Under the pieces are notes generated by a model, which saw nothing but the letters and a program-made list of their open reading frames with translations, was not told the origin of the DNA and searched no databases. From Saccharolobus solfataricus P2 (GTDB lineage Archaea > Thermoproteota > Thermoprotei_A > Sulfolobales > Sulfolobaceae): DNA of 64,000 bases. Positions 48,111 through 50,080 of the stretch are shown piece by piece (positions within the stretch are counted from its first letter, which is position 1; each line of letters begins with the position of its first letter). A program made the translations under genes and the position numbers. The stretch lies in the NCBI RefSeq assembly GCF_000007005.1, contig NC_002754.1; one strand, written 5' to 3'.

Positions 48111-48197
48111 ATGGAGGCAATCCTACAGACCAAAAAGATAGTTGTAATAGAGAGGAAATATGGTAGATGTGGATATTCTCCAAGCTGGGGAGACTGA
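48111..48197 (+). CDS. Putative RiPP precursor peptide MEAILQTKKIVVIERKYGRCGYSPSWGD (28 aa)
   Basis: Hand-translated; GGTGA RBS 4 nt before the ATG and TTTAAAT box at 48070; its stop overlaps the GAGGT RBS of the rSAM gene, which starts 12 nt later. Confidence 0.75.
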   Translation: MEAILQTKKIVVIERKYGRCGYSPSWGD

Positions 48198-48209
48198 GGT
48201 TATCTCCCC

Positions 48210-49394
48210 ATGGCTCTCTCTAAATTCAACCTTTTTATTGGCGATATTCTTTTTAATACCCTTACTGGGTACGCGATTAAGCTGGAATCATGGGAAATTG
48301 AGAAGTTAAGGAAAGGAGTTGTGCCAGAACATTTAAAGGATATAATAGAGGAAGGTTTCTCCGCTACGGATGAGGACTTAGATGAGGAAATTGAGAAGTT
48401 TTTAAGGAAGCCCGTTCTAGAACCTACTCTCGTATTAACTTATAATTGTAATTTTGATTGTATCTACTGTTTCCAAAAGGGGTTTAGAAAAAACATTTCG
48501 GTATCGGATAAGGTTACAAGGGGATTCGTAAACTACATTAGGAAGAACGAGAAAGGTAGGAAGGTAAGGGTAACTTACTTCGGTGGAGAACCAATCTTAC
48601 AGCTTAGGAAAATAGAGGAGATATCTAGGGAATTATCTGACTTAAAGTACTCGTTTAGTGTAGTAACTAATGGTTCTCTTTTGACTAGAAAGATAGTAGA
48701 GAGACTGATTCCACTAGGACTAACTCACGTCCAGATAACGTTAGATGGACCAAAAGAAGTTCACGATAAGAGGAGGTTCTTTGTTAGCGGTGAGGGTACG
48801 TTTGATGTGATTGTGAAGAATCTAAAGGAGATACAAGATATGGTAAAGGTTGTATTGAGGATAAACATTGATGTGAAGAACTTGAACGAAATAGGGGAGT
48901 TATTAAACGAATTGAAGATGGAGGGAATAAATAGAGTGAGATTAGATCCTCATTTGGTTCATTCAAATGTGTTCAGAAATGAGTGGTGGGATTTCACAAT
49001 ATCTAGTAAGGCTGAAGGAGATGTTATGGTTAAGTTCTGGGAGATTGCTAGGAAGTATGGATTTGAGGTTCCACAAGACGTGCTTAGATTAGGGTTATGT
49101 GTAGCTTATTCAAGTGAAGACATTGTTGTTGACCCAGAGGGAAACATTTATCCTTGCTGGGCTTTCACTGGAAACCCCCTTTACGTTAAGGGTAAGCTGG
49201 AAGAGGATGGGAGTGTTAAAGTAACTAATAAGTCGTTGTGGTGGAAGGTTAAAATTGAGGATAAGTGTAGGGAATGTCCATTTTTGCCGTTATGTATGGG
49301 TGGTTGTAAGTTCTTAGCAACTATTAATGGAGATGATTGTAAGAGAGAGGCGTATGAAAAGATAGTTAGGTCAATACGTTGGGTGATGGGCTAA
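48210..49394 (+). CDS. Radical SAM/SPASM peptide maturase candidate with N-terminal RRE-like extension
   Basis: About 70-aa N-terminal extension (ILFNTLTGYAIKL); CNFDCIYC, YFGGEP; SPASM C...DPEGNIYPC, CRECPFLPLCMGGC and a final C. Confidence 0.9.
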   Translation: MALSKFNLFIGDILFNTLTGYAIKLESWEIEKLRKGVVPEHLKDIIEEGFSATDEDLDEEIEKFLRKPVLEPTLVLTYNCNFDCIYCFQKGFRKNISVSDKVTRGFVNYIRKNEKGRKVRVTYFGGEPILQLRKIEEISRELSDLKYSFSVVTNGSLLTRKIVERLIPLGLTHVQITLDGPKEVHDKRRFFVSGEGTFDVIVKNLKEIQDMVKVVLRINIDVKNLNEIGELLNELKMEGINRVRLDPHLVHSNVFRNEWWDFTISSKAEGDVMVKFWEIARKYGFEVPQDVLRLGLCVAYSSEDIVVDPEGNIYPCWAFTGNPLYVKGKLEEDGSVKVTNKSLWWKVKIEDKCRECPFLPLCMGGCKFLATINGDDCKREAYEKIVRSIRWVMG

Positions 49395-50080
49395 TGGTTA
49401 AGGTAGGTAAGGTTAGGATAATGGAGTTATTGGAGCCTGAATTTTTCGGTACTGTACTTAATCACAATATATCTGTTATCGAAAATGGTCCTTGTGGGGG
49501 ATTAATGATGATTGATACTGGCTTACCGGGATATCTCGATCAGATTGAATCCTATCTTAAGGCATGGGGTTATTCCTTGGAGGATATTTCAGATATCGTA
49601 ATAACGCATTGGCATCACGATCATGCAGGAAACGCCATGGCAATAAAGAGGATAAGTGATGCTAAGATATACGCCCACGTGGATGAGTTAGGGGATTTGG
49701 AAAATCCTCCAAAATACAGCACTATATATAGTGATGAATTAGGGGTTTCTTTACCAGTGTTTAAGAGGACCATGGAGAGGATTAACAAGTTACACTATGA
49801 ACCAGTTAAGGTTGATTTTGCATTAAAAGGTGGTGAGGATTTGGGAGGGTTTAGGGTTATACATGTTCCGGGGCATACAAAGGGACATATTGCCTTATTT
49901 GATGGTAAGTGTTTAGTAGTTGGCGATGCTGTTAGGAACGTTAGAAATAAATTATCTCCACCCCTTAGAATATTCTCTTGGAATTACGAATTAGCAGTGA
50001 ACTCGTTCAATTATTTAATATCACTTCCCTATACTGTACTAATACCATTTCACGGTGATATCGTAATTAGGAATTTTTAA
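49394..50080 (+). CDS. Metallo-beta-lactamase-fold hydrolase, translationally coupled to the rSAM gene
   Basis: TAATG stop/start overlap at 49392..49396; IDTG, THWHHDHAG, PGHTKGH, VGDA, FHG. Confidence 0.85.
   Translation: MVKVGKVRIMELLEPEFFGTVLNHNISVIENGPCGGLMMIDTGLPGYLDQIESYLKAWGYSLEDISDIVITHWHHDHAGNAMAIKRISDAKIYAHVDELGDLENPPKYSTIYSDELGVSLPVFKRTMERINKLHYEPVKVDFALKGGEDLGGFRVIHVPGHTKGHIALFDGKCLVVGDAVRNVRNKLSPPLRIFSWNYELAVNSFNYLISLPYTVLIPFHGDIVIRNF

What the first reader, a model, noticed from the sequence alone, without database searches (positions are those of the whole stretch)
48111..50080. Candidate archaeal RiPP system 1: 28-aa peptide + RRE-radical SAM/SPASM + MBL hydrolase
Seen: an untracked ORF, MEAILQTKKIVVIERKYGRCGYSPSWGD, has its own TATA-like box and GGTGA RBS. 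Its stop codon overlaps the RBS of a radical SAM gene with an N-terminal extension and a full seven-Cys SPASM domain. That gene is TAATG-coupled to a metallo-beta-lactamase-fold hydrolase. Known: short peptide + RRE-rSAM-SPASM is the standard layout of sactipeptide, ranthipeptide and cyclophane (triceptide) clusters. Inference: KKIVVIE is the RRE-binding leader and YGRCGYSPSWGD the core. Two aromatic-Gly-X triplets (YGR, WGD) suggest three-residue cyclophane crosslinks, while the single Cys allows a thioether instead. The hydrolase may trim or tailor the product. No exporter is present, so the product may act inside the cell. Characterised RiPP chemistry from thermoacidophilic archaea is scarce to my knowledge; I cannot verify novelty without a search.
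Basis: partly seen in the sequence, partly recalled or inferred. Interest (0 to 1): 0.88.

Follow-up and report, generated by a model that had tools for sequence, protein, structure and literature searches.

The report
Conserved archaeal peptide with radical-SAM maturase
An unannotated 28-codon gene in a Saccharolobus-type genome encodes a peptide that sits in front of the same radical-SAM enzyme in every related acid-hot-spring archaeon examined, so it is very probably that enzyme's substrate in a peptide-modifying pathway whose product and role are still unknown.

Summary
The 28-aa ORF (48111..48197) lies 12 nt before a 394-aa radical SAM/SPASM gene that is TAATG-coupled to an MBL-fold hydrolase.

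A collinear peptide lies directly upstream of the orthologous enzyme in all 22 loci with upstream DNA: Saccharolobus, Metallosphaera, Acidianus, Sulfurisphaera, Ca. Aramenus, and Thermoplasmata including Acidiplasma. There are 14 distinct peptides with invariant R..xRCxYSPSWG. Synonymous sites are saturated (pS 0.5-1.0) while pN is 0-0.3.

The enzyme has CX3CX2C and seven invariant SPASM Cys. Its N-terminal domain has a three-strand, three-helix RRE topology (AF2 pLDDT 92). The best structural match is the thioether synthase CteB.

Corrections:
- The 'YGR' Tyr is not conserved, so only WG[D/E/N/Q] survives as a cyclophane motif.
- The nearest HMMs and the nearest bacterial peptides (CC cores) favour a Cys thioether.
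- MBL linkage is recurrent (11 of 22 loci, four arrangements) but not universal. It is usually paired with a U32-family gene that is absent from the window.

No family cut-off is met, NCBI does not annotate the peptide, and I found no literature. This is a new, uncharacterised member of the rSAM-RiPP kind, present in genetically tractable S. islandicus.

The parts
48070..48076 (+). TATA-like box TTTAAAT, about 38 nt upstream of the peptide ATG
   Evidence: Read directly. A similar GTTTAAA(A)T element precedes the Sulfurisphaera javensis peptide gene. No transcript data; weak evidence on its own.
48102..48106 (+). GGTGA Shine-Dalgarno-like motif, 4 nt before the ATG
   Evidence: Read directly. 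A short motif that is not significant alone.
48111..48197 (+). Precursor peptide gene (28 aa + stop): MEAILQTKKIVVIERKYGRCGYSPSWGD
   Evidence: A collinear homologue lies directly upstream of the orthologous rSAM in 22 of 22 loci. There are 14 distinct sequences, gapless over the last 20 residues, with R15, R19, C20, Y22, S23, P24, S25, W26 and G27 invariant. pS is 0.5-1.0 against pN 0-0.3. L082 and L086 differ by 11 synonymous and 0 non-synonymous changes. Ser25 switches between AGY and TCN codons. No Rfam match. The exact sequence is not in the 15-billion-protein collection. Only JGI/IMG calls the S. islandicus-type and Acidiplasma versions, the former as 'hypothetical protein'.
48132..48158 (+). 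Putative leader / recognition segment KKIVVIERK (residues 8-16)
   Evidence: Conserved as [KR]-[VIL]-[VL]-[KRV]-[ILV]-x-R-[KR]. A similar RIVVLKK motif occurs in the Nitrospirota peptides next to enzymes 28% identical to this one. The role is inferred by analogy with RRE-dependent RiPPs.
48162..48194 (+). Putative core GRCGYSPSWGD (residues 18-28)
   Evidence: R-C-x-Y-S-P-S-W-G is invariant and the last residue is restricted to D/E/N/Q. The leader/core boundary is not established.
48210..49394 (+). RRE-like + radical SAM + SPASM peptide maturase (394 aa)
   Evidence: Pfam Radical_SAM 6.9e-21. Best NCBIfam hits are the geopeptide maturase TIGR04280 (241 bits, cut-off 400), CefB (216, cut-off 600) and PapB (148, cut-off 340). 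Ten Cys are invariant. AF2 pLDDT 92.4 with strands 7-10, 13-16 and 22-24 followed by helices 27-34, 40-49 and 54-65. Foldseek top hit is CteB (5why/5wgg), E 4e-19, TM 0.72 over about 440 columns. PDB sequence top hit is CteB, 7e-20.
48210..48407 (+). N-terminal RRE-like winged-helix domain (residues 1-66)
   Evidence: Three-strand, three-helix topology in the AF2 model. The alignment to CteB is about 70 columns longer than the alignment to the RRE-less anSME. No PqqD/RRE Pfam hit even at E<=10.
49098..49340 (+). SPASM domain with seven invariant Cys (C297...C377)
   Evidence: Pfam SPASM scores 16.7 bits, sub-threshold.
49394..50080 (+). MBL-fold metallo-hydrolase (228 aa), start overlapping the rSAM stop (TAATG)
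   Evidence: Pfam Lactamase_B 2e-31. HWHHDH and the downstream His/Asp motifs are present. It is 59% identical to the MBL of M. tengchongensis and 43% to that of Acidiplasma, both of which lie next to the peptide-rSAM pair. The orthogroup is confined to Sulfolobales and Thermoplasmata, with a sharp drop below 44% identity. Adjacent to the pair in 11 of 22 loci in four arrangements.
51382..51939 (+). Conserved neighbour of unknown function (p179/p187 family). Membership of the system is uncertain.
   Evidence: Next to the rSAM in Saccharolobus, A. hospitalis, Metallosphaera, A. brierleyi, Aramenus, L093 and L096. C2, C110, C113, C120 and an SKSYxY motif are invariant. There are only 41 representatives in 1.8 billion proteins. 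No Pfam/NCBIfam hit and no fold match.

Best explanation
This is a two-gene core: a ribosomally made precursor peptide and its dedicated RRE-rSAM-SPASM maturase.

Shown:
- The peptide gene is real, is under strong purifying selection at the amino-acid level, and is always the cistron immediately before the enzyme.
- The enzyme has the three-cluster cysteine complement and the fold of peptide-modifying SPASM enzymes.

Inferred mechanism:
1. The basic, strand-forming leader (K-V-V-K-I-E-R-K) docks on the N-terminal winged-helix domain.
2. The radical SAM cluster generates 5'-deoxyadenosyl radical.
3. That radical abstracts a hydrogen from a residue of the invariant R-C-x-Y-S-P-S-W-G-[D/E/N/Q] tail.
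4. With the help of the two auxiliary clusters, an intramolecular cross-link forms (-2 Da).

My first choice for the link is a thioether from the invariant Cys20. The best candidate acceptor is a carbon of the C-terminal D/E/N/Q, as in ranthipeptide/QhpD-type chemistry. Second choice is a Trp26 (or Tyr22) carbon cross-link.

The MBL-fold hydrolase, translationally coupled here, probably acts on the modified peptide (trimming or hydrolytic tailoring). This rests on gene linkage only.

The peptide is single-copy, almost invariant across two phyla, and has no exporter, immunity gene or dedicated leader protease. The product therefore looks more like a conserved cell-own factor (signal, cofactor-like or regulatory peptide) than a fast-evolving antibiotic.
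For: - Peptide conservation: 22 of 22 loci and 14 variants.
- Codon evidence for translation.
- Tight coupling, 0-18 nt between peptide stop and enzyme start.
- No RNA family match.
- Enzyme motifs and invariant Cys.
- The top HMMs are all peptide maturases acting on Cys-containing peptides: geopeptide, CefB, TIGR04463, Clo7bot, PapB.
- AF2 model with pLDDT 92 and an RRE-like N-terminus.
- Best fold and best PDB sequence match is CteB.
- The nearest bacterial relatives carry upstream peptides with a similar leader and a CC...Y.P..W core. One of them weakly matches the geopeptide model.
- The last residue is limited to D/E/N/Q although other single-nucleotide neighbours would be available.
- MBL orthologues are adjacent in four different arrangements. 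In Saccharolobus and in L097 the MBL stays with the peptide-rSAM pair without U32.
- The archaeal clade is monophyletic (100/98), with Thermoplasmata as one sub-clade. These carry peptide-rSAM and U32-MBL as one block.
Against: - No transcript, translation or mass-spectrometry evidence.
- The enzyme falls below every curated NCBIfam cut-off, so no chemistry can be transferred by equivalog.
- No sequence-level RRE hit.
- The thioether assignment rests on HMM ranking and analogy. Trp/Tyr cross-links and other rSAM chemistries are not excluded.
- The MBL is not adjacent in about half of the loci. In S. ohwakuensis the MBL lies at least 8 kb from any peptide-rSAM pair, although that species does encode the rSAM.
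- The usual partner of the MBL, U32, is far more widely distributed than the peptide. The MBL could therefore belong to another pathway.
Confidence: 0.8

Rival explanations
1. Same precursor and maturase, but the chemistry is an aromatic carbon cross-link rather than a thioether. One option is a triceptide-type three-residue cyclophane between Trp26 and the beta-carbon of residue 28 (W-G-[D/E/N/Q]). Another is a Tyr22/Trp26 C-C, C-O or C-N link.
For: - Y22, W26 and G27 are invariant, and residue 28 is restricted to side chains with a C-beta methylene next to a carbonyl, or one carbon further out.
- An aromatic-X-X motif is the triceptide hallmark (established knowledge).
- DynA, YhhB and GrrM/FxsB-type models do give hits.
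Against: - Cyclophane-synthase models score far lower (YhhB 68 bits, DynA 103) than the geopeptide, CefB and PapB models (148-241 bits).
- The best fold match is a thioether synthase.
- The one residue class shared with the nearest bacterial precursors is Cys.
Confidence: 0.25
2. The peptide is the precursor of a small peptide-derived cofactor or redox-active molecule, in the manner of PQQ or mycofactocin. The rSAM makes the first cross-link. The MBL-fold enzyme, and in most lineages the neighbouring U32-family Fe-S protein, then carry out hydroxylation, excision or trimming.
For: - The peptide is near-invariant across Sulfolobales and Thermoplasmata.
- It is single-copy, with no exporter or immunity gene.
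- There is recurrent linkage to MBL and U32.
- rSAM and MBL co-occur in every named species where both could be checked: Saccharolobus, several Metallosphaera, A. hospitalis, A. brierleyi, A. sulfidivorans, Aramenus, S. ohwakuensis and Stygiolobus.
- PqqB is an MBL-fold enzyme, and several U32 proteins are Fe-S hydroxylases (established knowledge, not tested here).
Against: - The MBL resembles small glyoxalase-II, lactonase or B3-type hydrolases. It shows no PqqB hit.
- U32 orthologues are much more widespread than the peptide. In Metallosphaera and A. brierleyi they sit in an operon with AhbD/NirJ-like rSAM genes.
- No dependent oxidoreductase is a conserved neighbour.
- PqqE and MftC models are not among the best hits for this enzyme.
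Confidence: 0.15
3. The small ORF is a regulatory upstream ORF, or a chance ORF. The enzyme matures some other protein or small molecule, for example an anSME-like protein maturase, as the old annotation 'arylsulfatase regulator' implies.
For: - Some sources name the enzyme 'arylsulfatase regulator' or 'PQQ synthesis protein E'.
- anSME is the second-best structural match.
- Short ORFs are abundant here.
Against: - The amino-acid sequence, not just the presence of an ORF, is conserved, with saturated synonymous sites.
- The invariant residues are Cys, Tyr, Pro, Trp and Gly at the C-terminus.
- The enzyme carries an extra N-terminal RRE-like domain that anSME lacks.
- The anSME model scores 87 bits against a 349 cut-off.
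Confidence: 0.04

Closest known systems
Geopeptide system (NCBIfam TIGR04229 peptide + TIGR04280 'geopeptide radical SAM maturase'; a hypothetical equivalog, uncharacterised)
   Same: It is the best-scoring enzyme model (241 bits, aligned over residues 13-387). The layout is the same: a short peptide directly upstream of an RRE-rSAM-SPASM gene. Nitrospirota relatives (28% identity) carry peptides with a similar K/R-I-V-V-L leader and a C-terminal Cys/Tyr/Pro/Trp-containing core. One of these weakly hits TIGR04229.
   Different: The score is far below the 400-bit cut-off. The archaeal peptides do not hit TIGR04229 at all. They have one Cys instead of the CC doublet. The archaeal clade sits on a long, fully supported stem.
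Ranthipeptides / QhpD-type Cys-to-Asp/Glu (or Asn) thioether formation (PapB family NF047865; QhpD TIGR03906)
   Same: PapB is the best-scoring experimentally characterised model (148 bits). The peptide has an invariant Cys and a C-terminal residue restricted to D/E/N/Q. These are the acceptor types used by such enzymes (established knowledge).
   Different: The score is below the cut-off (340). There is a single Cys and a C-x7-[DENQ] spacing rather than repeated CX2-3[D/E] motifs. No chemistry has been tested.
SCIFF peptide / CteB sactionine synthase
   Same: CteB is the best solved-structure match by sequence (7e-20) and by fold (E 4e-19, TM 0.72), including the N-terminal RRE. As with SCIFF, the peptide is highly conserved, single-copy, lacks an exporter, and has no known function.
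   Different: Identity is 19-20%. The SCIFF maturase model scores 97 bits against a 425 cut-off. The precursor has one Cys (two in Thermoplasmata), not six, and is half as long.
Triceptides (three-residue cyclophane RiPPs; YhhB/XyeB, GrrM, FxsB families)
   Same: The same enzyme superfamily. The W-G-[D/E/N/Q] at the C-terminus fits the aromatic-X-X motif.
   Different: Model scores are low (YhhB 68 against 445). There is only one conserved triplet.
PQQ and mycofactocin pathways (peptide-derived cofactors)
   Same: A small, invariant precursor with the functional residues at the C-terminus; an RRE-dependent rSAM/SPASM first step; an MBL-fold protein in the neighbourhood (PqqB is MBL-fold, established knowledge); no exporter.
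   Different: There is no E-x3-Y or G-V-Y motif. The PqqE, MftC and PqqB models are not among the best hits. There are no PqqC/MftD-type partners.

Membership tests
RRE-dependent radical SAM/SPASM RiPP maturase with cognate precursor (generic class) | CX3CX2C radical SAM cluster motif | tested here: met
   C80, C84 and C87 are invariant in 90 homologues. Pfam Radical_SAM 6.9e-21.
RRE-dependent radical SAM/SPASM RiPP maturase with cognate precursor (generic class) | SPASM domain with seven Cys for two auxiliary [4Fe-4S] clusters | tested here: met
   C297, C316, C353, C356, C362, C366 and C377 are invariant. The Pfam SPASM hit itself is sub-threshold (16.7 bits against 21.5). The fold matches SPASM enzymes.
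RRE-dependent radical SAM/SPASM RiPP maturase with cognate precursor (generic class) | RiPP recognition element (PqqD-like winged helix) | tested here: inconclusive
   The AF2 model shows three strands then three helices in residues 7-65. The CteB alignment extends over the N-terminal domain. No PqqD/RRE HMM hit was found for nine N-terminal domains at E<=10.
RRE-dependent radical SAM/SPASM RiPP maturase with cognate precursor (generic class) | Conserved short precursor gene adjacent to the enzyme | tested here: met
   22 of 22 loci, 14 variants, pN much lower than pS.
RRE-dependent radical SAM/SPASM RiPP maturase with cognate precursor (generic class) | Enzyme-dependent post-translational modification of the peptide | not testable with these tools
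   Needs co-expression or reconstitution plus mass spectrometry.
Geopeptide system (TIGR04280 / TIGR04229) | Enzyme reaches the curated cut-off of TIGR04280 (400 bits) | tested here: not met
   241.4 bits.
Geopeptide system (TIGR04280 / TIGR04229) | Peptide matches TIGR04229 | tested here: not met
   No hit for three archaeal peptides at E<=10. A Nitrospirota neighbour peptide gives only E 0.04.
Ranthipeptide (PapB family NF047865) | Enzyme reaches the cut-off (340 bits) | tested here: not met
   148.5 bits.
Ranthipeptide (PapB family NF047865) | Precursor with a Cys donor and a non-alpha-carbon acceptor (Asp/Glu/Asn etc.) | tested here: inconclusive
   Cys20 is invariant and residue 28 is limited to D/E/N/Q. 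The spacing and copy number differ from known motifs, and the linkage is untested.
SCIFF / sactipeptide (TIGR03974; CteB) | Enzyme reaches the cut-off (425 bits); six-Cys precursor of about 45 aa | tested here: not met
   96.7 bits. The precursor is 21-28 aa with 1-2 Cys.
Triceptide / three-residue cyclophane (YhhB NF041707, GrrM, FxsB) | Enzyme reaches the family cut-off | tested here: not met
   YhhB scores 68 bits against 445. GrrM and FxsB are not among the top 25.
Triceptide / three-residue cyclophane (YhhB NF041707, GrrM, FxsB) | Conserved aromatic-X-X motifs in the core | tested here: inconclusive
   W-G-[DENQ] is conserved. In Y-G-R the Tyr is not conserved (I/A/M/T/L elsewhere).
PQQ biosynthesis | PqqA E-x3-Y motif, PqqE equivalog, PqqB-type MBL | tested here: not met
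   No E-x3-Y motif. PqqE is not among the top 25 models for this enzyme. The best MBL hits are B3, glyoxalase II and lactonase, with no PqqB hit.

The most novel reading that the evidence does not exclude
The peptide is not an antibiotic-type RiPP. It is the precursor of a conserved, cell-own molecule of thermoacidophilic archaea: a peptide-derived cofactor or an intracellular or quorum signal. It would be made by the rSAM enzyme together with the MBL-fold hydrolase and, in most lineages, the neighbouring U32-family Fe-S protein. It would have been exchanged as one block between Sulfolobales and Thermoplasmata.
Probability: 0.18. Interest if true: 0.9.

Novelty: new member of a known kind. Interest (0 to 1): 0.62.

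Why it matters
According to a 2025 survey read here (PMC12144867), archaeal rSAM-RiPP clusters are predicted in numbers, but only haloarchaeal lanthipeptides have been characterised.

This locus offers a concrete, sharply defined case:
- The precursor is 21-28 aa, small enough for synthesis.
- The enzyme is compact and thermostable.
- The system is present in Saccharolobus islandicus and Metallosphaera sedula. Genetics and omics exist for these organisms (my own knowledge).

The peptide gene is missing from NCBI annotation of these model genomes. The finding therefore also corrects the annotation.

Near-invariance over two phyla suggests a physiological role worth finding.

Tried and rejected
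- **Known peptide family:** NCBIfam and Pfam give nothing for the archaeal peptides.
- **RNA element instead of ORF:** no Rfam hit, and the codon pattern is that of coding sequence.
- **Sequence-level RRE:** no PqqD hit for nine N-terminal domains.
- **Function of the conserved 179-187-aa neighbour:** no Pfam or NCBIfam hit. AF2 gives pLDDT 75 and Foldseek finds nothing at E<0.1. The family has only 41 representatives. Left as unknown.
- **U32 as a dedicated partner:** rejected as dedicated. Orthologues also occur in S. tokodaii, Nitrososphaeria and many Thermoplasmata. S. islandicus U32 is unlinked and has no MBL beside it.
- **My own early idea that the system marks metal-mobilising lithoautotrophs:** dropped once cluster members showed it in heterotrophic Saccharolobus and in Stygiolobus.
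- **My own idea of a link to caldariellaquinone:** dropped for lack of any evidence, and because the system occurs in Thermoplasmata.
- **Virus-borne copies:** a degenerate coding pattern found nothing in IMG/VR. A first pattern was mis-specified or too degenerate.
- **Literature:** no paper contains the peptide motif or the word 'geopeptide'. Searches for Sulfolobales RiPP or rSAM, and for U32/MBL/precursor, gave nothing specific.
- **Failed look-ups:** four exact-sequence look-ups found no record.
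Full report
**1. The observation**

- A 28-codon ORF (48111..48197, +) encodes MEAILQTKKIVVIERKYGRCGYSPSWGD.
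- It is preceded by TTTAAAT (48070-48076) and GGTGA (48102-48106).
- Its TGA lies inside TGAGGT, 9 nt before the ATG of a 394-aa ORF (48210..49394).
- That ORF's TAA overlaps the ATG of a 228-aa ORF (49394..50080).

Pfam finds Radical_SAM (6.9e-21), a sub-threshold SPASM hit and, in the third gene, Lactamase_B (2e-31).

On their own, a 28-codon ORF and two short motifs mean little. One search lists 90 ORFs of at least 20 aa in this 9-kb stretch.

**2. The decisive comparative test**

The enzyme has a tight group of orthologues at 49-89% identity in Sulfolobales and Thermoplasmata. Identity then falls abruptly to about 30% in bacterial relatives.

I fetched the DNA around orthologues from isolate genomes, MAGs and metagenomes. 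In all 22 loci that include upstream DNA, a collinear peptide gene lies directly in front of the enzyme gene. These loci cover the window, Saccharolobus-like contigs, A. hospitalis, A. manzaensis, A. brierleyi, M. tengchongensis and Metallosphaera-like contigs, Sulfurisphaera javensis, Ca. Aramenus, a Thermoplasmata MAG and Acidiplasma.

The 14 distinct peptides align without gaps over their last 20 residues. The pattern is [KR]-[VIL]-[VL]-x-[ILV]-x-R-[KR]-x-[GCS]-R-C-[GN]-Y-S-P-S-W-G-[DENQ]-stop. R15, R19, C20, Y22, S23, P24, S25, W26 and G27 are invariant.

At the DNA level, synonymous sites are saturated (pS 0.5-1.0) while pN is 0-0.3. Two species differ by 11 synonymous and no non-synonymous changes. 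One serine switches between AGY and TCN codons. The peptide stop lies 0-18 nt from the enzyme start everywhere, and the two overlap as TAATG in one Thermoplasmata MAG. No Rfam family matches the region.

This is a translated gene under purifying selection, coupled to the enzyme gene.

**3. The enzyme**

The CX3CX2C motif (C80/84/87) and seven further cysteines in the SPASM region are invariant across 90 homologues.

The best NCBIfam models are all peptide maturases:

| Model | Bits | Cut-off |
|---|---|---|
| Geopeptide maturase | 241 | 400 |
| CefB | 216 | 600 |
| TIGR04463 | 172 | 525 |
| Clo7bot | 162 | 600 |
| PapB | 148 | 340 |
| DynA | 103 | 450 |
| SCIFF maturase | 97 | 425 |
| QhpD | 89 | 453 |
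| anSME | 87 | 349 |
| YhhB | 68 | 445 |

None reaches its cut-off.

An AF2 model built on 90 sequences is confident (pLDDT 92.4). It shows an N-terminal unit of three strands followed by three helices (residues 7-65), which is the RRE topology.

Foldseek's best hits are the thioether synthase CteB (E 4e-19, TM 0.72, about 440 aligned columns). Next come anSME (about 370 columns, no N-terminal domain), ChlB and SuiB. CteB is also the best PDB hit by sequence.

No PqqD-type HMM hit was obtained for nine N-terminal domains. The RRE is therefore supported by fold only.

**4. What chemistry**

Nothing here shows it. The pointers are as follows.
- The higher-scoring models and the best structure are Cys-modifying thioether enzymes. 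The cyclophane-forming families score much lower.
- The nearest bacterial relatives (Nitrospirota, 28% identity) have upstream peptides such as MKNRIVVLKKGVEKKQVVEGLCCMGAYIPYLWM. Others read ...TSTTCCAGALMRI. They share a similar basic I-V-V leader, and cysteine is the common core feature. One weakly matches the 22-position geopeptide model (E 0.04).
- The archaeal C-terminal residue is confined to D, E, N or Q. These are the acceptor types of PapB-, QhpD- and NxxC-type thioether enzymes (my knowledge, not tested). The same restriction would also fit the third position of a triceptide W-X-X cyclophane.

I therefore rank the options as follows: a Cys20 thioether first (about half of the probability mass), an aromatic cross-link on Trp26 or Tyr22 second, other chemistry third.

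That position is I, A, M, T or L elsewhere. It should be dropped.

**5. The MBL hydrolase and other neighbours**

The window's MBL is the orthologue (59% and 43% identity) of an MBL found next to the peptide-rSAM pair in M. tengchongensis and Acidiplasma. Its orthogroup is confined to Sulfolobales and Thermoplasmata, with a sharp drop below 44% identity.

Four arrangements occur:
- A divergent U32-MBL unit facing the peptide-rSAM pair: M. tengchongensis, A. brierleyi/L096, the Thermoplasmata MAG and Acidiplasma.
- The same unit about 4 kb away (L092).
- The MBL alone, divergent (L097).
- The MBL fused behind the rSAM with an overlapping stop/start: the window and the S. islandicus-like contigs L087/L088.

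In S. islandicus the U32 gene is elsewhere and has no MBL beside it. So in Saccharolobus the MBL stayed with the peptide-rSAM pair. No U32 gene is in the window.

In 11 of 22 loci no MBL is within the fetched flanks. In S. ohwakuensis the U32-MBL pair lies at least 8 kb from any peptide-rSAM pair, although that species also has the enzyme.

Named species in which I could find both families are Saccharolobus, M. tengchongensis, M. cuprina, M. javensis, M. yellowstonensis, A. hospitalis, A. brierleyi, A. sulfidivorans, Aramenus, S. ohwakuensis and Stygiolobus. I found no counter-example, but the survey is incomplete.

U32 orthologues are much more widespread. In Metallosphaera and A. brierleyi, U32-MBL is followed by AhbD/NirJ-like rSAM genes. 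I treat U32 as not dedicated to this system.

The MBL itself is a small, motif-complete enzyme of the glyoxalase-II, lactonase or B3 type, not PqqB-like.

A 179-187-aa protein with four invariant Cys is the most frequent neighbour in Sulfolobales. It has no recognisable family or fold.

No exporter, immunity gene or leader protease is conserved nearby.

**6. Distribution and evolution**

Cluster membership shows the enzyme in the following:
- S. islandicus (REY15A, L.S.2.15, M.16.4 and others), S. shibatae and S. caldissimus
- M. sedula, M. prunae, M. cuprina, M. hakonensis, M. javensis and M. yellowstonensis
- several Acidianus species
- S. ohwakuensis and S. javensis
- Sulfuracidifex metallicus and Stygiolobus azoricus
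- Ca. Aramenus
- Acidiplasma

The window itself belongs to a 3.03-Mb Saccharolobus-type genome. This is inferred.

In a maximum-likelihood tree the archaeal clade is monophyletic (100/98) on a long stem. Thermoplasmata form one fully supported sub-clade in an unresolved polytomy with the Sulfolobales groups. This fits a single transfer between the two thermoacidophile lineages; the direction is open.

**7. Comparison with the known, and novelty**

By architecture this is a standard RRE-rSAM-SPASM plus precursor pair. It fails the curated thresholds of every named family. Its peptide matches no model.

The peptide is not annotated in NCBI records. Only JGI/IMG calls it in some assemblies, as 'hypothetical protein' where it gives a name at all. 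The enzyme is variously named 'radical SAM/SPASM', 'arylsulfatase regulator' or 'PQQ synthesis protein E'.

Full-text searches found no paper with the motif, with 'geopeptide', or describing a Sulfolobales rSAM RiPP. A 2025 survey states that archaeal rSAM RiPPs are predicted but uncharacterised.

I file it as a new member of a known kind.

The most novel reading not excluded is a conserved, cell-own peptide-derived factor (cofactor-like or signal) made with the MBL. I give that about 0.18.

**8. Verdict**

- The core interpretation (a real precursor plus its RiPP-type maturase) is well supported by comparative genomics.
- The chemistry, the role of the MBL and the biological function remain inferred.

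Noticed in passing
window 36951..37979 (-), with 35795..36979 (-): A second RiPP-maturase-like rSAM/SPASM gene (342 aa). Its best hit is TIGR04463 at 144 bits, below cut-off, and it is 25% identical to the enzyme studied here. Matches begin at model position ~78, so it lacks the N-terminal RRE-like domain. A 394-aa ORF with no family hit follows it.
   Followed up: partly
window 50081..51258: About 900 nt between the MBL and the 187-aa gene are absent from the S. islandicus-like contig L088. They are weakly similar to segments at 30.8-31.7 kb, 2-123 and 3820-3877 of the window. This looks like a degenerate IS or repeat remnant that splits an otherwise syntenic rSAM-MBL-p187-cupin block.
   Followed up: partly
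window 51382..51939 (+); L001 5319..5855; L081 5283..5813; L118 7104..7613 (-): A small orphan family (41 representatives) that accompanies the peptide-rSAM pair in many Sulfolobales. It has invariant Cys2/110/113/120 and an SKSYxY motif. There is a possible helix-turn-helix, but only as a non-significant TrmB hit (E 0.09). No fold match.
   Followed up: yes
L081 1..3791 (-); L118 779..4680 (-); L092 3..3709; L096 878..4752: An operon of U32-family protein, MBL, an AhbD/NirJ2-like rSAM/SPASM (TIGR04053, 354 bits) and a second rSAM, with overlapping gene ends. It occurs in Metallosphaera and A. brierleyi. Its function is unknown, and it suggests that U32-MBL may also serve a tetrapyrrole-type pathway.
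   Followed up: partly
L118 6001..7101 (A. brierleyi CP029289.2): The deposited gene model of the rSAM (366 aa) appears 5'-truncated. The reading frame continues upstream to just after the stop of the unannotated peptide gene.
   Followed up: partly
L001/L089/L090/L106, about 5392..5682 (or 3393..3686 in L001): In the A. hospitalis lineage a 97-aa ABM-type monooxygenase gene (Pfam ABM 1e-14) lies just upstream of the peptide gene on the same strand. It was not seen in other lineages.
   Followed up: no
window 53062..54666 (-) and 54932..55897 (+): A 534-aa haem-copper oxidase subunit-I-like ORF (Pfam COX1 1e-28, no NCBIfam hit) lies next to an IS4/ISH3-like transposase ORF.
   Followed up: no
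L003, L004, L014 about 3764..3866; L007 1350..1505; L008 1929..2099: Nitrospirota relatives of the enzyme have unannotated upstream peptides. Examples are MKNRIVVLKKGVEKKQVVEGLCCMGAYIPYLWM and a lysine-rich ...TSTTCCAGALMRI type. These look like uncharacterised geopeptide-like precursors.
   Followed up: partly
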